This document shows, one piece after another, positions 32,227 to 44,571 of a stretch of 64,000 nt of DNA. A model generated the notes under the pieces. That model made no database searches and was not told the DNA's origin. It saw nothing but the letters and a program-made list of their open reading frames with translations. How positions within the stretch are numbered: position 1 is the stretch's first letter; each line of letters starts with the position of its first letter. A program made the position numbers and the translations under genes. The stretch comes from Phallusia mammillata (lineage: Eukaryota). The stretch covers positions 11,656,001 through 11,720,000 of the forward strand of contig OZ281501.1 in the NCBI GenBank assembly GCA_965637545.1, in the 5' to 3' direction.

Positions 32227-35200
32227 TTAAGTCTGAGCAGGAGCCCCGGCAGCTGCAGCAGCGGCTGCATACTGCTGTCCATGCATAGCATAATACTGTC
32301 TGTAGTATTCAGCCCATGCAGCAGAATAATCGGTGGTAGCCTGGAAATATATTTTTAAAGTGTCAGAAGTAAACAAATGACAGATATTATACATTTTCAA
32401 CCTTTGTTATTACAGCAGTAGATATTTTCAACCTTTAACAACTTTCACAACTGTACCTCGCCATGGATCATTGAAGTTATCTTAATTGGTCATTTCTATT
32501 CACACATTTTAAACAAGGGGATCTTCTCACAGTTGATGCTAATACAGAAATGGCAACAAAGCGCTAGTTTACCTGGGTTGTTGCTGGTTGTGCAGCTGGA
32601 GCAGCATTAGGTGCAGGTTGTTGAATAGCTTGAGCATTAGGAGCAGCTACAGCAGCTGCTGCTGCAACAGCACCTGTTGAATCAAAAATATGATGATCAA
32701 AATTAACCACTAAAATATTTCACTGTGCCGAATTTACAGTAGGGGTATGTCAGATAATGTTGTAACCGTTAACATCAATAAGTCAGAAGCAAGACTGGCA
32801 AGTTACATAATCATCATTCACAGCAAGTGTAACTTATATATAAGTCCAAAATGCCATGCACTAACCTGTTTGTTTTAAGTACTCATCCCATTGCTTGGTG
32901 TAATCTGGTTGACTGGCAGCAGCAACAGCAGTTGCAGCGGAAGCTGAAAAAACAGTAAAATGTTTTGCAAAGAGCACATAATACCGTTTCAATTAAATCT
33001 AAATCTGAGCTTGCTAAAACCTCTGCAATTTAATCTGCCACATGGACAATTCTATTATGCATCAGATCAGTAACATCATTTATGGCCCTTTTACTCAACT
33101 GACAATGTGTAAGTTCAATGTAGTTCTAGCACAGCCCTAACTTCCATGACATCTACACATACCTGCAGGTTGCTGAATAGCTTGCGCTTGACCATATAAC
33201 TGAAGATATGACTGCCAGGCTGCAGCATTACTATCAGCCACAGGTTTGCCTATAATATAGAAAGTTTAACACTTATTTTTCATAAATGTGACATAAATGT
33301 AAAATAGTTCATCTACATACCCAATTCAGTTCCATTCTGCTGGGGTGTTGTAGCAGTTGGTGGGTTCCACTGTTGAAACTGTCCTCCCCATGGCTGTTGC
33401 TGCTGGAATGATTGTGGAGCTGGTTGTGCTTGTGGTGGGGCTTGCAGCTGGGTCTGGGCCGGGTAGCTTGCAGGGGGGAGTCCGCCATATGCCTGCTGCT
33501 GCCAAAAAAATGTTGATCCTATTTGAGTGCTCACAACTAAAGTGTTTGATTTTTCTCACAATGGGCAGTGTTTTTGTTTAGGCAGAGGAGATAAAGTTGA
33601 AACAGTTTTGGACAAACAGAAATAAATGTTGCACAGCTATTGTTTAAATAATGAACATCATTATTGTCATGTTATCATAAAAAGCAAGACATTTTTTTAA
33701 CAAAAAATCCTTGGCAACTTAACAACTTCCTCTACCAGAAACAACACACAGTGTGTATGAAAAGCTCAGACTAAATAAAAGTTGTCTTCACTGGATTTTG
33801 CAACCCATCTTAACCACAGGGTAGCATCATTGCTTCTCAATATATGTATATACCATCAAAGTTTCCATACCTGTGGGGGAGGCTGAGCATAGGCACTGGG
33901 TGGGGGTTGGCCAGGGGGACCACCTCCAATTTGACCACGGTATCCTTGATTATTAGTAGTTCCTCCAGGACCAGCATCAACTTTTTCTTGAATAAGTCTT
34001 CTTGCTGCAGTGATCTGTTCTTGCGTACCTGTAGGAATAGGATTTATCAGTGCTTTGACCAACTACAGCTAAACAAGTTGCCTGATAAACTCCTTTTTAA
34101 CACAAAGCTGCGGAAATTTAAACAAAGTAACTAAACCTTTTATCAAAAACGTCTTGTAGTTCAAATCGGAGCCAGGTGGTGGATTTCTTTGTATTTCAGC
34201 ATGTGCACCAGATTGCATGTTAATCTGCTTGATGGTTTCCCCACCTGTGAATGACAAGAAACACTTGCTTACATGTCTGCTGATGTTTGGCAAAATATAA
34301 CATAATTTGCAACACAAACCTTTGCCGATGACCAGACCAGTTCGATTTGCTGGAACCAAATGTTCAGCAGTGGTATGTCCACCCATGTTTTGACCTCTGT
34401 TCTGATTGGTTCCTTCCCATTGACCAAAACCAGGTGGACCACCACCACCACCACCTCCCCCACCACCTATAGCACCACCACCAGCAGTGCCACCCATTCT
34501 TTGACCTGTAACAACACAGACATATCACCTCATGCTAAAATAATTGAAAAAATGTAAACAATGTTTGAAAAGTATATATCTCAGATAATGTTGTAACGTT
34601 CTATCTTCATAAATTCAGAAGCAGAACTGGCATGTTACAGATTCATCATAGATAAAACCAAATCAATTAGGTAAGATTTAAGCAACTAAAAACACCAACT
34701 TGACCAACGCCACATGTTGTGGATTGTCAGGCAGGTAACCTTTTCAGTTTACCTCCCATCATACCATCGCGCTCTTGAACATTCTGTATGATTTGGTGGA
34801 TCTTTCTGATGGCAGCATCCACACCATCTTTCCTCCCAGTCACACTGCACATACGCTCGGGGAGTCCAGGCTCCTCTATATAAAGTTTTACAGATTGTAA
34901 GGTTTACCAAGTGCAAAATACCAAGCAATCACTACAAACAATATTCATGCTTGGTACCATGAAGCATTTTGTCCACAGCAGACTTACCGGGTTTAAATTG
35001 TATGCGAGTTCCTGTTTCATCCTGAATTTGATTGATCATGTCACCACCCTTGCCAATCACAACTCCCACAGCAGCTTTTGGAACAGGAATGAATGACCGA
35101 TTTGCATCATCGCCAAACATAGATGGCTATGATGATAACAAAACTAGTTTAGCATATATGTGTTATAGTAATATAAGATTTTTTTCTGTGCAAGAAGGCT

Positions 35201-38200
35201 CAGTTCAAAAAGATTAGCTTCATTGGCTTAACAACCATCTTAACCACAGGGTAACATCACTGCCATATAACAAAAATGTTTGAAGTAAATTTTGTTCTTA
35301 CATCAGCATTTCCATCCATTTTTTGCTGAGCAATTTGCTGGTCTCTGTTGGCCATCATTTGATGAATCATGTTGACAGCATTCTAAAAACATATTGTTAA
35401 GTTATGAAACTAACCACCACCTTTTTAAACTTTAATTTAATACAATGTAACCTTCAAGCGCTAACTTATTTTTAGCACTTTTTAGCTCGAAAAATTGTAC
35501 TCTTTATCCTGGTAATCGCCCAAATTTGTTTAGTTTGCAAAACCACAGTACACCGAAAACTTACATCAATATTTATTTGTGGTCCAGTTATCTTCAGCGG
35601 TTTAGCCAGACCTAGATTTTCAGTTGATTCTTGAATAAGAAGCATTTTCACTCCCAAAGTTTGTTGTAACTAAAAACAATAGGAATCTAAGAAGTCATCA
35701 ATACCAGCAGTTGAACCATAATCTATCGTTATGTTAAGAGTAGCCATCAGGAAATGGGTGATAGACTTGAAGTCATCATAATTTGCAACAAATTCAAATA
35801 ATCTGACATCATTTGGCAGAATAGCACAAACTTTATTGTGAAACTGCAATGCATACCATTTTAATGGTCTCTCCACCCTTTCCAATGATAAGGCCACACT
35901 TGTCAGGAGGAATATCAATAGTAACTGACTTGTCCATGCCATCGCCCATACCTTGCAGACCACCAGAAGCAAGATTAAAGTTATTTCCAAGTGTACCAGC
36001 TTGTGATCTTGAAACTATCTCATTCAGCATATTCCTGCACACACTAAGTAAAAAAAACACACAATTAAACCATACATCTCCATGTAAATGTTAATAGGTG
36101 TTATGAAAAAATGCCATCAGTGATAGGGTGATAGATAATAAGTCATCATTGTAGAATTTACTATGACCAAACTTGCATCATTTGGCAAAACTATGGAAAT
36201 AAAGTGGTTATGCATTAAACTTACTCAATTTGCTCTACTGTGCCAGATAGAGTACATGGTCTTTCTTTGGTGCCAGGCATACTTTGCGTAATTTGAATTC
36301 GGCAACCGGTTTCTCTTTGCATTCGCATGATGTTTTCACCTCCACGACCAATAACTGGAAGGTAGAAGATACTATAACTACCTGCTATGCTGTATAATGT
36401 ATATCCAGATAATAGACTTACTTAATCCCACAAGATCATCCGGTAGGCTGATGGTCTCTGACATCATGCCACTAAAATGTCAATTAATATTGATAAACCT
36501 ATTTTACTCAAATCTTTGTTTCAAACACAACATTTGTTTAATTGGCAACTTTACTTACGCCTCTGCTTGCATTCCAGGGACAACAGAAGAATTATTTGAC
36601 ACAGCTAGAAACAACAGTATATATTTACCACTGCATAACTCAAACCAGGTAACCACAAGATACTTACAATTAGCAACACTAAGTGGAAGAGGAGCTAGTT
36701 TTTTTGGCCCAGGCTCTTCTGAAAAAAACAAACATATCAAATATCATGACTAGCTTAGTTTATTTGAAAAATAGTGTTATCTAACTGAACACAATCACTG
36801 CAGTAACGAACTTCACAGTCAAAGTCTGACTAGTCATAAGGAAGCAGAAAGACACCCAAGTGTGAAAACAACCCACTGGGTTACTGGCTCAAGCACAATC
36901 CCACCTTTTTCACTGTTTAAGCACACTGCAGGCAAGGCAGGCCTGGCAGATACTGAGATTAACTGGTCTAGGTACAAAGCACAAAGCATAGAGGAATGTG
37001 CTAATAAGAGATAGAGAACTTCCTGCCTGTGTGGCCCACATCCTGTAATAGGACTCGCTATAAAAAGCTGTAGCTGCCTGTTCATAGTTTCACAGGAATA
37101 GCCATTATTGTGTGTTAGTATGTTCCAAGCAGCTGTTAATGGCAATTTGAAGTGTTTTATGATACTAAGAACAAAATTTGTTTTTCAAGTAACACACATT
37201 GAAAAAAGCATGTGGTCATCTACACATAATCTTTGTTCTTTTTATTTTGTAGCAGTAATTAGATTTTATACAAAACGAATATAAAGCACAAACATACCAC
37301 CATCTTCTAAAGCTCTTTTCTGTGGAGCGTCTCCCATAGGCCCAGGGGCTGCCAGTAGTGAGTGGGGAACCTAAAAATTATAAAAAATGACAACAGAATA
37401 ATAAAAGGTCACAAATCCAGTTGGATAAGATAGAATTATGCCTCCCAGTGGCAACTATGCTCCCAATAGCAGTAAATAATGTGGCAGAAATTATATGTAT
37501 AGGTCACTATAACAGGTTGAAAGTTATATTTCTTTGTTGAACAAGGCTTTTATAATACATTGTGGAAACATTGAATTACCATGATACCTCTTTGCTATTA
37601 ATTGCTACAACACTCTTTCTGTATGTAAAGTTGCATATATATTTGCACTACTTTCAATATGTTTTGCTGTGTTGGCAATAGTCACAGAAAAAAATGCTTT
37701 GGTTTATTTCCAGAATAATGAGTCAGGGATATTTTTTATTGTAGTTGATGCTATTCCAAACTGTGAACTTGGATCTCCATGATAACATGTGTTTGCTCTA
37801 GTACACTGGTTCTCAACTAGGGGGGCCACGAGCTGTGTTCCGGGGGGCCACAGGTGTAGATTCACCAGAAACACCCACTAAAAGCCATTTTTTAAACTTA
37901 TTCCCTAATTTAATCGACTATTTCACATACTATTGGCTACATTGAGGTTTTTCATGATTTTGGATTTTTGTTTACTCTATTCGCCCTGTTTAAAGCCAAA
38001 ATTTATACTGAATTCCAACACAAGATTGCCATTTACATTTAAAGGGGGCAGTGTGTTTTTGCAAGCCAATGTTCTTGTTTGAGTGTATTAAACATAAAAT
38101 TAGACAATACAGCTAACTAAAATTTTTGTTAATTTTCAATATTTCCTTTCCTGCAGTGATTTAATTAAAATCAAACGTTTATCATAAGCAATATACAATT

Positions 38201-39756
38201 TTGTATTTTGTTGTGTGGTAAGATTTCAAATCCTTGTTTGCAACTACATGTCTCTGAGGTTGCTGTAGGTCAACATTATGAAGTTTTAAAATGCAACTCT
38301 GAAATTTGTTTGAGGATGCCTAATGCTAAGTTTTTAATCTTCACATATGCAATTTCATTAGCTTTTTGTTAATCACTATAAAGTCAAACAATTTGATTTA
38401 ATGTACTTATTTAATCTTTGCTGAACCAATTTATGTCAGTAACTTGCTTTTATAACTTGTCAATATAAAGTGATTTACCCAACTGTCTGGACATATAAGC
38501 AAACAAACAATGCTAACTATCATCACAATAAGCCTTGTTTTCTCTACCAAAGAATCATGATTGTAGTCTATATTACTGAACTGTTTGACAGAATTATAAC
38601 AACATGCAGTTTATGGTGAAATTGCAACTTAGAAAGTGCTCTTTTTAGGAATCTAGAGAGATTGTTATATCACCAAAAAACAGTTTGCATATCAGGATTA
38701 CGCTCACAAACTGAATGCATTGAAATTAGGTTTTCATCCCAAGAATGATTTGGTGGGAAATTCTCAACATAACAACATTTCAGAATTCTGTAAATTTTGT
38801 TTCAAAATCTCAGGAAAAAGAAACCAAGCAAAACTTATTTTAAGCTTTCATATCTAATTTAGTAATAAATGCTCTCCAGTAGTACAAAAATTAAAGAAAA
38901 CGTCTTTAACTAGAGACGTACAATTAAAATGTGCAAAATTGACTTATTTTCCTGAATCCTGAAAAACTATGGTAATAAAAAAACATATTTTGAATTATGA
39001 ATTAGGAAATATTTGAATTATGCACAATCTGCATCATACAGTCAGATTTGCATAAACTTTGTAATAGGGTTCCTCTATTTCTCGACTTTTTCGCTTCGCG
39101 AGAACTGAGAATTTGCCAAGTTCTGACCATGAATATTGTTGTATTAAGTGTCAACTTCATTGCTTAACATGGTAGTGTATTGTTATACACTATTCCTTTG
39201 TGTGCTGTTTATTACTTTGTGTGCTGTTTTGCAGATTCTATTATTTCTTAAAACATTATTATCAGCAAAGGAACAACAATACAGAACATATATATCAGGT
39301 AAAATAAAAGTAAAATGGAGTTGCATTATCACTTGACGATTGTTTAACAAGTTATTGGTATTTGTGTGGGCTGTGGTAAAATATCTTTGCATGCTTCAAG
39401 AGATGATTGCTGTCAGTGCACTGCAGAATTGGTTATTGCTTTACATTAAACATTATGCAAAAAACAGAAACATTATTTTTTACAAACACATGGCTACATA
39501 GCCATATGGCTATAGCCATTTGCATTATGACCAAGAAATTACAAAGAAAGGTTGCAACTATATTTTTTTACTGTTTTTGAAACTGTTGAAAGCAAAAAAA
39601 AAACACAAATCAAACATCGCAAATGGATAGCAATTTAACAACTATAAAATACAATTCTACCAAAATGGCACTGACCTCTTGTTGTGAAGTGATGTTGTCT
39701 ACAGTGTTGATTTCAATTTGAGCGTCTCCAGATGCATTAGCAATCCCCTCGGCCAT
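32227..39756 (-). CDS. FUBP1: Far upstream element-binding protein family (FUBP1/KHSRP/PSI-like), ~691 aa
   Basis: 19 phase-compatible exons: 39756-39676, 37370-37298, 36718-36668, 36604-36559, 36471-36422, 36354-36225, 36043-35857, 35669-35565, 35382-35302, 35126-34988, 34875-34753, 34505-34320, 34244-34137, 34028-33871, 33498-33321, 33249-33163, 32943-32866, 32673-32573, 32340-32227. Four KH GxxG loops (IGRGG, IGKGG x3), QKRALEDG, three Tyr motifs ([26 protein letters not shown]). Co-ortholog of vertebrate FUBP1/2/3. Confidence 0.95.
32746..32822 (-). ncRNA. C/D box snoRNA, diverged U38/snR61-like paralog (intron 17)
   Basis: C ATGATGA, D' CTGA, C' TGATGT, D CTGA, terminal stem TGTG/CATA. 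D' guide GCCAGTCTTGCTT; D side GTTACAACATTAT shared with 34577-34654. Confidence 0.8.
32958..33086 (-). ncRNA. Candidate H/ACA snoRNA (intron 16, 129 nt)
   Basis: Hairpin 1 closed by GCCATA/TGTGGC, H box AGATTA, hairpin 2 closed by TTGCA-GAG/CTC-TT-TGCAA, then ACA plus 3 nt. It ends unusually close to the 3' splice site. Confidence 0.4.
33762..33835 (-). ncRNA. C/D box snoRNA, target unassigned (intron 14)
   Basis: Terminal stem AAGC/GCTT, C ATGATGC, probable D' AAGA, C' GTGAAGA, D CTGA. Shares TACCCTGTGGTTAAGATGG with 35197-35264. Confidence 0.72.
34577..34654 (-). ncRNA. C/D box snoRNA, U38 (SNORD38)/snR61 homolog (intron 11)
   Basis: Terminal stem TATCT/AGATA, C ATGATGA, D' CTGA, C' ATGAAGA, D CTGA. 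The 13-nt D' guide GCCAGTTCTGCTT is complementary to conserved LSU rRNA AAGCAGAACUGGC; the +5 rule selects the A I recall as yeast Am1133 / human Am1858. Confidence 0.88.
35197..35264 (-). ncRNA. C/D box snoRNA, target unassigned (intron 9)
   Basis: Terminal stem GGC/GCC, C GTGATGT, probable D' AAGA, C' ATGAAGC, D CTGA. Paralog of 33762-33835. Confidence 0.72.
35743..35817 (-). ncRNA. C/D box snoRNA, target unassigned (intron 7)
   Basis: Terminal stem GCCA/TGGC, C ATGATGT, D' TTGA, internal stem AATTTG/CAAATT, C' ATGATGA, D CTGA. D guide TCTATCACCCATTTC. Confidence 0.78.
36113..36186 (-). ncRNA. C/D box snoRNA, target unassigned (intron 6)
   Basis: Terminal stem GCCA/TGGC, C ATGATGC, C' ATGATGA, D CTGA. 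D guide TCTATCACCCTATCA. Paralog of 35743-35817. Confidence 0.75.
37804..38049. mobile_element. hAT/Charlie-type MITE, right-truncated (FUBP intron 1)
   Basis: Begins CACTGGTTCTCAAC; body matches 11763-11950. Confidence 0.75.
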
Positions 39757-44489: not shown

Positions 44490-44571
44490 CGTCGTCGGCA
44501 GGATTCGAACCTGCGCGGGCAGAGCCCAACAGATTTCTAGTCTGTCGCCTTAACCACTCGGCCACGACGAC
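44490..44571 (-). tRNA. tRNA-Ser(AGA)
   Basis: 82 nt, GTCGTCGTGGCCGAGTGGTTAAGGCG ACAGA-CT-AGA-AA-TCTGT, long variable arm, GGTTCGAATCCTGCCGACGACG. A and B boxes intact; TTTT terminator just downstream. Confidence 0.97.

What the first reader, a model, noticed from the sequence alone, without database searches (positions are those of the whole stretch)
32746..36186. FUBP/PSI gene is a multi-snoRNA host with three duplicated C/D pairs spread over its introns
Seen: six 68-78 nt units with C and D boxes and terminal stems, one per intron (6, 7, 9, 11, 14, 17), in the order X X Y Z Y Z, plus an H/ACA candidate in intron 16. Host introns are ~175-370 nt, while many empty ones are 60-110 nt. Known: intronic snoRNAs move and duplicate between introns of housekeeping genes. 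I do not recall FUBP genes as such hosts. Only family Z has a recognisable target. Introns 8 and 18 are also long and may hide more.
Basis: partly seen in the sequence, partly recalled or inferred. Interest (0 to 1): 0.75.

Follow-up and report, generated by a model that had tools for sequence, protein, structure and literature searches.

The report
Six intronic snoRNAs in FUBP gene
A sea-squirt gene for a FUBP-type RNA/DNA-binding protein carries six genuine small nucleolar RNA genes (three families, two copies each) inside its introns, which is a new host for an ordinary and well-understood arrangement.

Summary
The six box C/D units are real. All lie in sense orientation in introns 6, 7, 9, 11, 14 and 17 of a minus-strand four-KH FUBP/KHSRP-like gene, and RNA contigs confirm every splice junction listed for the region.

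- **X pair** is SNORD83 (one copy above Rfam's cut-off).
- **Z pair** is snR61/SNORD38. Its guide matches the conserved LSU sequence around the SNORD38 site.
- **Y pair** fits no Rfam family.

The units recur in the same introns of the orthologous gene in two related species. Against the closest relative they are 74-88% identical without gaps, while the rest of the introns is 40% identical. Five of the six end 68-73 nt before the 3' splice site, the classic position for splicing-coupled C/D snoRNP assembly. The sixth, Y2, sits 263 nt away and has a longer terminal stem.

SNORD83-like snoRNAs also occur in FUBP-like loci of more distant relatives, so this host link is old in the group.

Not supported: the H/ACA candidate in intron 16, and anything hidden in introns 8 and 18. 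Expression of the small RNAs could not be shown, because the RNA runs available hold only spliced mRNA.

Verdict: a new member of a known kind, of modest interest. The scan had already noted the Y pair (s1-361576).

The parts
32230..39707 (-). Host gene: FUBP/KHSRP/PSI-like protein with four KH domains and about 19 exons. Exon 1 starts at 39678 or above; the stop codon is near 32230.
   Evidence: The splice junctions listed for the region stand in RNA contigs of four runs with GT..AG ends. Exon 1 was located from the loose end of those contigs. KH_1 hits on four exons and a weak FUBP_C hit. Best solved relatives are FUSE-binding protein and FUBP2.
36112..36186 (-). X1: SNORD83-type box C/D snoRNA in intron 6 (36044-36224), ending 68 nt before the 3' splice site.
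   Evidence: Rfam SNORD83 40.8 bits against cut-off 35. An ortholog sits in intron 6 of L005; identity is 84% with no gaps. Terminal stem GCCA/UGGC.
35742..35817 (-). X2: second SNORD83-type snoRNA in intron 7 (35670-35856), ending 72 nt before the 3' splice site.
   Evidence: Rfam 32.9 bits, below the cut-off. It has the same boxes, stem and conserved 11-nt element as X1. Orthologs sit in intron 7 of L005 and L002.
35197..35264 (-). Y1: unassigned box C/D snoRNA in intron 9 (35127-35301), ending 70 nt before the 3' splice site.
   Evidence: A 19-nt stretch after the C box is invariant in Y1, Y2, L005 and L002. Orthologs sit in intron 9 of L005 and L002. The terminal stem shows compensatory changes.
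34578..34654 (-). Z1: snR61/SNORD38-type snoRNA in intron 11 (34506-34752), ending 72 nt before the 3' splice site.
   Evidence: Rfam snosnR61 46.4 bits against cut-off 45. Its D' guide pairs over 13 nt plus one wobble with an LSU sequence present in 61 rDNA loci. Orthologs sit in intron 11 of L005 and L002.
33762..33835 (-). Y2: second Y copy in intron 14 (33499-33870), 263 nt before the 3' splice site, with a 7-8 bp terminal stem.
   Evidence: No Y copy was found anywhere else in L002, intron 14 included.
32747..32822 (-). Z2: second Z copy in intron 17 (32674-32865), ending 73 nt before the 3' splice site. Its guide differs from Z1 at positions 6 and 7.
   Evidence: Rfam 33.8 bits, below the cut-off. 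An ortholog in intron 17 of L002 shares the C at guide position 7.
32944..33162 (-).
   Evidence: Fold z-scores +0.32 and +0.55. No Rfam hit. No similarity to L002.

Best explanation
The gene is a highly transcribed FUBP/KHSRP-type housekeeping gene that doubles as a host for six intron-encoded box C/D snoRNAs of three families. Each snoRNA is inferred to be made in the standard way. The core snoRNP proteins (SNU13, NOP56, NOP58, fibrillarin) assemble on the C/D motif while the intron is being spliced. The lariat is then debranched, and exonucleases trim it back to the protein-protected 68-77 nt unit. Z guides 2'-O-methylation of the LSU rRNA adenosine that SNORD38/snR61 guides in other eukaryotes. 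X is the tunicate SNORD83, an orphan whose conserved 11-nt element has no match in conserved rRNA. Y is a lineage-restricted snoRNA with a short conserved guide in front of a degenerate D' box. The pairs arose by separate copying of single snoRNAs into other introns of the same gene, at different times: Z first, then X, and Y last or lost elsewhere. Shown: sequence features, splicing, position and conservation. Inferred: processing, protein binding, methylation and expression of the small RNAs.
For: Boxes, stems and family matches. Sense orientation inside introns, with the junctions listed present in RNA contigs. Five of the six end 68-73 nt before the 3' splice site (coordinates). That is the conserved position reported for intronic C/D snoRNAs, about 50 nt before the branch point (PMC8162545). 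Orthologs in the same introns: L005 has X in introns 6 and 7, Y in 9 and Z in 11; L002/L003 has X in 7, Y in 9 and Z in 11 and 17. Selection: window against L005 gives 74-88% identity without gaps in the snoRNAs, 40% in the other intron sequence and 80% in exons. Against L002, intron similarity survives at the snoRNAs and at one 45-nt block in intron 2. The Y terminal stem shows compensatory changes (AU, CG, GC). The Z guide matches the LSU sequence in 61 of 118 rDNA loci, and the fifth-nucleotide rule puts the methyl group on the A of AAGC[A]GAAC. SNORD38 is listed for 28S-A1858 in PMC6466398.
Against: No read evidence that the small RNAs accumulate. The four RNA-type runs laid hold only spliced mRNA contigs and none covers a snoRNA; such libraries lose short RNAs, so this says nothing either way. 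X2 and Z2 score below Rfam's cut-offs. Z2 and its L002 ortholog carry a C at guide position 7. That C would face an A in the usual LSU sequence, so these copies may be impaired. Y2 sits far from the optimal position. The rRNA of this species was not available, so all target statements rest on rDNA from other eukaryotes.
Confidence: 0.85

Rival explanations
1. Only one copy per family is functional, and the second copies (X2, Y2, Z2) are decaying duplicates that are still spliced out but no longer make working snoRNPs.
For: X2 and Z2 fall below Rfam's cut-offs. Z2 has a C.A mismatch two nucleotides from the target position if the rRNA has the usual sequence. Y2 is 263 nt from the 3' splice site and was not found in L002.
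Against: All second copies keep intact C and D boxes and terminal stems. X2 has an ortholog in L005 at 82% identity without gaps. Z2 has an ortholog in L002 that keeps its boxes and most of its guide. X2 and Z2 sit at the optimal 72-73 nt. Six of the 67 rDNA loci that carry this site have a G where the C of the intron-17 copies would pair. Y2 has an extended 7-8 bp stem, the kind of feature I recall from memory as compensating for a poor position.
Confidence: 0.25
2. The units are chance clusters of short box motifs in AT-rich introns.
For: C and D boxes are short, and a loose scan also turns up a weak candidate in intron 1.
Against: Two units pass curated Rfam cut-offs. Pairs share guides but not flanks. 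Orthologs sit in the same introns. Conservation is far above that of the surrounding intron.
Confidence: 0.01
3. The host choice is functional: snoRNA output is tied to a FUBP-type regulator of growth genes, so ribosome modification follows FUBP transcription.
For: SNORD83-type snoRNAs sit in FUBP-like loci of several samples. This shows that the association has lasted.
Against: Six of the thirteen related loci fetched have no C/D snoRNA in the gene. Y and Z are limited to one clade. Nothing tested here links host function and cargo.
Confidence: 0.08

Closest known systems
SNORD83 (Rfam RF00137; human SNORD83A/B, which I recall as lying in RPL3 introns)
   Same: Length, GCCA/UGGC terminal stem, C, C' and D boxes, and the 11-nt element AUCUAUCACCC before the D box, which is identical to the Rfam consensus. 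It is present as two copies in neighbouring introns of one host, as I recall for human. Its target is listed as unknown (PMC3349704).
   Different: The host is a FUBP-type gene, not a ribosomal protein gene. The spacing between the conserved element and the D box is 5 nt in four copies and 4 nt in L002 and the Rfam consensus. More distant FUBP-like loci carry SNORD83 with a changed element.
snR61 / Z1 / Z11 / SNORD38 (Rfam RF00476; human SNORD38A/B in RPS8, 28S-A1858, PMC6466398)
   Same: The D' guide is complementary to the same LSU sequence, the fifth-nucleotide rule selects the same adenosine, and there are two copies in one host.
   Different: The host is FUBP-like rather than RPS8. The intron-17 copies have a changed guide (positions 6 and 7). 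A conserved GUAAC/GUUAC internal stem explains part of what looked like a second guide.
Multi-snoRNA protein-coding hosts in general. From memory, the hsc70 gene with U14 copies in several introns is one example; in this genome, a domino-type gene with about 18 snoRNAs
   Same: One snoRNA per intron, sense strand, paralogous copies within one host, and host introns longer than empty ones.
   Different: FUBP/KHSRP genes are not described as snoRNA hosts in the papers I could search.
SNORD53/SNORD92 (Rfam RF00325), the nearest family to Y
   Same: Overall layout and a UGGUU core in the 5' guide align over the full length.
   Different: 26.5 bits against a cut-off of 46, and only for Y2. Y is not a member by Rfam's criterion.

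Membership tests
Box C/D snoRNA (intron-encoded) | C box RUGAUGA near the 5' end and D box CUGA near the 3' end, joined by a short terminal stem; total length about 60-100 nt | tested here: met
   All six units. Stems are 3-8 bp.
Box C/D snoRNA (intron-encoded) | Sense orientation in a spliced intron, at the conserved distance before the 3' splice site | tested here: met
   The listed junctions stand in RNA contigs. Distances are 68, 72, 70, 72 and 73 nt for five units; Y2 is at 263 nt. The position rule is cited from PMC8162545.
Box C/D snoRNA (intron-encoded) | Conservation of boxes and guide, but not flanks, in orthologous introns | tested here: met
Box C/D snoRNA (intron-encoded) | Accumulates as a discrete small RNA bound by fibrillarin, NOP56, NOP58 and SNU13 | tested here: inconclusive
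   The only runs available are contigs of mRNA-type libraries, and none covers a snoRNA. Protein binding cannot be tested here.
SNORD83 (RF00137) | Score at or above Rfam's gathering cut-off of 35 bits | tested here: met
   X1 40.8. Orthologs: L002 45.4, L005 38.9, L128 46.5 and 44.2, L129 42.9. X2 scores 32.9 and the L005 intron-7 copy 30.1, both below the cut-off. They are filed with the family through their paralogs.
snR61/Z1/Z11-SNORD38 (RF00476) | Score at or above the gathering cut-off of 45 bits, and a guide for the LSU adenosine of the SNORD38 site | tested here: met
   Z1 46.4 and L005 47.6. The guide is complementary to an LSU sequence in 61 rDNA loci. Z2 scores 33.8 and has a guide mismatch, so its membership rests on paralogy.
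SNORD53/SNORD92 (RF00325), considered for Y | Score at or above the gathering cut-off of 46 bits | tested here: not met
   26.5 bits for Y2; nothing listed for Y1.
H/ACA snoRNA (intron 16 candidate) | Two hairpins separated by an ANANNA hinge, ACA three nucleotides from the 3' end, stable fold, and conservation | tested here: not met
   The fold is no better than shuffles. The hinge motif is buried in a stem. The ACA is about 16 nt from the 3' splice site. There is no Rfam hit and no ortholog similarity.
FUBP/KHSRP/PSI protein family (host) | Four type-I KH domains and C-terminal tyrosine-rich FUBP_C repeats | tested here: met
   KH_1 on four exons; FUBP_C at 17.9 bits, just under its cut-off of 20.1. 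Top solved relatives are FUSE-binding protein and FUBP2. Only single exons were tested.

The most novel reading that the evidence does not exclude
The link between SNORD83 and the FUBP gene is ancestral to a large part of the tunicates, and the FUBP introns act as a nursery. SNORD83-derived copies spread from intron to intron and, in some lineages, keep the scaffold (GCCA/UGGC stem and boxes) while replacing the guide element, as in the 'V' copies in L001 and L006 and the altered elements in L128 and L129. Separately, the Y guide may serve two LSU sites that share ACCACAG. By my memory of the numbering, one of them is the conserved methylated A guided by snR47/SNORD36 in other eukaryotes.
Probability: 0.2. 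Interest if true: 0.45.

Novelty: new member of a known kind. Interest (0 to 1): 0.3.

Why it matters
The finding adds a documented case of snoRNA host switching. SNORD38 sits in a ribosomal protein gene in human (PMC6466398), and so does SNORD83 by my memory; here both share one FUBP-type gene. It also gives a small dated series of intron-to-intron copying events within a single host. SNORD83 keeps the same 11-nt element from the vertebrate-based Rfam consensus to this sea squirt while having no match in conserved rRNA, which narrows the search for its target. For annotation, it supplies six snoRNA genes and an unassigned family (Y) for ascidian genomes. It does not change how snoRNA biogenesis is understood.

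Tried and rejected
1. **Expression from public runs.** All holders were contig sets of mRNA-type libraries. They gave the exon junctions but no cover of any snoRNA, so this is not evidence for or against expression.
2. **H/ACA in intron 16, and hidden RNAs in introns 8, 18 and the 3' part of 14.** Fold z-scores lie between -0.62 and +1.02, and there are no Rfam hits.
3. **One block duplication YZ to YZYZ.** Rejected, because L002 has Z in introns 11 and 17 but Y only in intron 9.
4. **A second (D-box) guide in Z.** The conserved GUUAC pairs with GUAAC after the C box, the rest is not conserved in L002, and it has no recurrent rRNA match.
5. **An rRNA target for the X element.** The best conserved complement is no better than 12 of 60 shuffles. 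One review states an 18S target for SNORD83A without naming a site (PMC10932220), while PMC3349704 lists the target as unknown.
6. **An rRNA target for Y.** With AAGA read as the D' box, the 10-nt guide pairs with uACCACAGGG (9 bp, 83 loci) and AACCACAGcc (8 bp, 45 loci). Three of 60 shuffles do as well, so this is suggestive only. The tRNA-Lys idea of note s1-361576 could not be tested because no tRNA-Lys gene is in the window.
7. **Non-conserved guides of single copies, and the guides of the V, L128 and L129 snoRNAs.** No convincing conserved rRNA complement.
8. **Retroposition marks.** Reading the sequence next to the copies showed no poly-A tail or target-site duplication, and similarity between paralogs ends at the unit boundaries.
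9. **A viral-contig scan for rDNA** gave only a 360-nt LSU fragment.
Full report
**What is there**

The region 32230-39707 holds one minus-strand gene. Contigs of four public RNA-type runs join its exons, and every junction listed has GT..AG ends.

Single exons, translated by reference, hit KH_1 four times and FUBP_C weakly. One KH exon finds FUSE-binding protein and FUBP2/KHSRP as its best solved relatives. The host is therefore a FUBP/KHSRP/PSI-type protein. I did not build or search the joined coding sequence.

**The six units**

Reading the minus strand and aligning the pairs shows six units of 68-77 nt:

| Unit | Coordinates | Intron | Intron length (nt) | Distance to 3' splice site (nt) |
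|---|---|---|---|---|
| X1 | 36112-36186 | 6 | 181 | 68 |
| X2 | 35742-35817 | 7 | 187 | 72 |
| Y1 | 35197-35264 | 9 | 175 | 70 |
| Z1 | 34578-34654 | 11 | 247 | 72 |
| Y2 | 33762-33835 | 14 | 372 | 263 |
| Z2 | 32747-32822 | 17 | 192 | 73 |

- Each unit has a C box, a D box and a terminal stem of 3-8 bp.
- Within each pair the boxes and one guide-like stretch are conserved, and similarity stops at the unit boundaries.
- Rfam places X1 in SNORD83 (40.8 bits, cut-off 35) and Z1 in snR61/Z1/Z11, the SNORD38 clan (46.4, cut-off 45).
- X2 (32.9) and Z2 (33.8) hit the same families below the cut-off.
- Y reaches only 26.5 bits against SNORD53/SNORD92, whose cut-off is 46.

**Position in the intron**

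Using the RNA-supported intron ends, five of the six units end 68-73 nt before the 3' splice site. [quoted passage not shown] Y2 is the exception at 263 nt, and it has the longest terminal stem (7-8 bp).

Empty introns 3, 4, 5, 10, 12, 13 and 15 measure 63-112 nt. Introns 1, 2, 8, 16 and 18 are long but empty.

**Related loci**

The ORF of the exon between X1 and X2 found short exon-type proteins on long contigs. I fetched thirteen loci with the same exon structure (exon maps).

- **L005**, the closest (88-100% exon identity), is a contig that ends at exon 13. It has X in introns 6 and 7, Y in intron 9 and Z in intron 11.
- **L002 and L003** are the same sequence from two metagenomes. They have X in intron 7, Y in intron 9, and Z in introns 11 and 17.
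- A global alignment of the window against L005 gives 74-88% identity without gaps inside the four shared snoRNAs, 40% in the remaining intron sequence and 80% in exons.
- Against L002, intron similarity survives at the snoRNAs and at one block in intron 2.
- The Y terminal stem changes by compensating pairs (AU, CG, GC).

**History of the copies**

- Z was duplicated before the split from the L002 lineage. The intron-17 copies of both species share a derived C at guide position 7.
- X was duplicated before the split from L005. It is single in L002, or was lost there.
- The intron-14 Y copy was not found in L002.

These differences exclude a single Y-Z block duplication. I saw no poly-A tails and no target-site duplications next to the copies, so the mechanism of copying remains open.

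**Wider distribution**

- SNORD83 above Rfam's cut-off also sits in intron 5 of two further FUBP-like loci, L128 and L129. L128 has a second copy about 2.4 kb past exon 17.
- Loci L001 and L006 carry two to three copies of a snoRNA with the same GCCA/UGGC stem and boxes but another guide. I call this family V.
- Six loci (L004, L007, L008, L127, L130, L131) have none.
- Y and Z are confined to the window, L005 and L002.
- Four ENA samples each hold two FUBP-like loci, so paralogs or mixed hosts are involved. I could not name the species.
- Earlier notes of this scan call the window's genome Phallusia mammillata. I did not check this.

**Targets**

No rRNA of this species was at hand. I fetched 118 eukaryotic rDNA stretches from metagenomes with a conserved LSU pattern, oriented them and scanned them for complements, allowing G-U pairs. 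I did not inspect these contigs one by one and took none for human.

- **Z.** The D' guide pairs with AAGCAGAACUGGC(G) in 61 loci. The fifth-nucleotide rule selects the A of AAGC[A]GAAC, in line with SNORD38 and 28S-A1858 (PMC6466398).
- **Z, intron-17 copies.** They would have a C.A mismatch at position 7, unless the rRNA has G there, as six of the 67 loci carrying this site do.
- **Z, 3' stretch.** The conserved stretch is largely one strand of an internal GUAAC/GUUAC stem.
- **X.** The element AUCUAUCACCC is identical to the Rfam consensus and has no conserved rRNA complement (12 of 60 shuffles do as well). SNORD83 is listed as targetless (PMC3349704).
- **Y.** I read AAGA as a degenerate D' box, followed by a small hairpin and a UGAAGA C' box. 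The 10-nt guide then pairs with uACCACAGGG (83 loci) and AACCACAGcc (45 loci), placing the same A opposite position 5. Three of 60 shuffles score as well, so this is a lead and not an assignment.
- **Y, second site.** From memory, this site is the A methylated under snR47/SNORD36 guidance. I could not verify the numbering with the tools.

**What failed**

The RNA runs show no contig over any snoRNA. These are mRNA-type assemblies, so the point stays open.

The H/ACA candidate in intron 16 and the long introns 8 and 18 fold no better than shuffled sequence. They also have no family match and no conserved counterpart.

**Verdict**

The arrangement works like every multi-snoRNA host.

What is new:
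- the host gene; searches for FUBP as a snoRNA host found nothing relevant
- the presence of SNORD83 and SNORD38 relatives in one non-ribosomal host
- the unassigned Y family
- signs that SNORD83-type copies have long lived and moved within FUBP-like genes of this animal group

Another note (s1-375411) shows that heavily loaded protein-coding hosts occur elsewhere in this genome.

Noticed in passing
window 37009-37053 (minus strand, intron 2): A 45-nt block is 87% identical to intron 2 of L002 (6831-6875), while the rest of the intron is not alignable. It is preceded by UUACAG. It could be a small alternative exon or a regulatory site. No junction to it appears among the joints listed from the RNA contigs.
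   Followed up: partly
L001 8445-8516, 9332-9394, 11309-11380; L006 7743-7813, 11827-11901: A further C/D snoRNA family ('V') sits in introns 7, 8 and 11 (L001) and introns 6 and 10 (L006) of FUBP-like loci. It has the SNORD83-like GCCA/UGGC stem and C' box but different, lineage-specific D guides. It has no Rfam match and no clear rRNA complement.
   Followed up: partly
L128 9376-9448 and 16042-16114; L129 9481-9551: SNORD83 above Rfam's cut-off lies in intron 5 of a second FUBP-like locus in two ENA samples, with the conserved element changed in its D-box-proximal half. One L128 copy lies about 2.4 kb beyond exon 17.
   Followed up: partly
L001/L129, L004/L127, L006/L128, L007/L008: Each of four ENA assemblies holds two different FUBP-like loci with the same exon structure. 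This could be a gene duplication in that lineage or two animals in one sample.
   Followed up: no
window 44490-44571 (minus strand): An 82-nt tRNA with a long variable arm (Rfam 64.4 bits), read by eye as tRNA-Ser with anticodon AGA.
   Followed up: no
window 38436-38526 (minus strand, intron 1): A weak C/D-like candidate (GUGAUGA ... CUGA, 4-bp stem) found by a loose motif scan. It has no Rfam hit and no similarity in L002, so it is probably chance.
   Followed up: partly
window 33000-33085 (minus strand, intron 16): An AAUGAUGU motif is followed about 70 nt later by CUCAGA, some 60 nt before the 3' splice site. This may be the relic of a decayed C/D snoRNA. No stem and no ortholog.
   Followed up: no
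L008 3645-3801 and 12116-12241; L128 14935-15185: Long hairpins match plant and animal miRNA models on both strands, far below the cut-offs. They are most likely inverted-repeat transposable elements.
   Followed up: no
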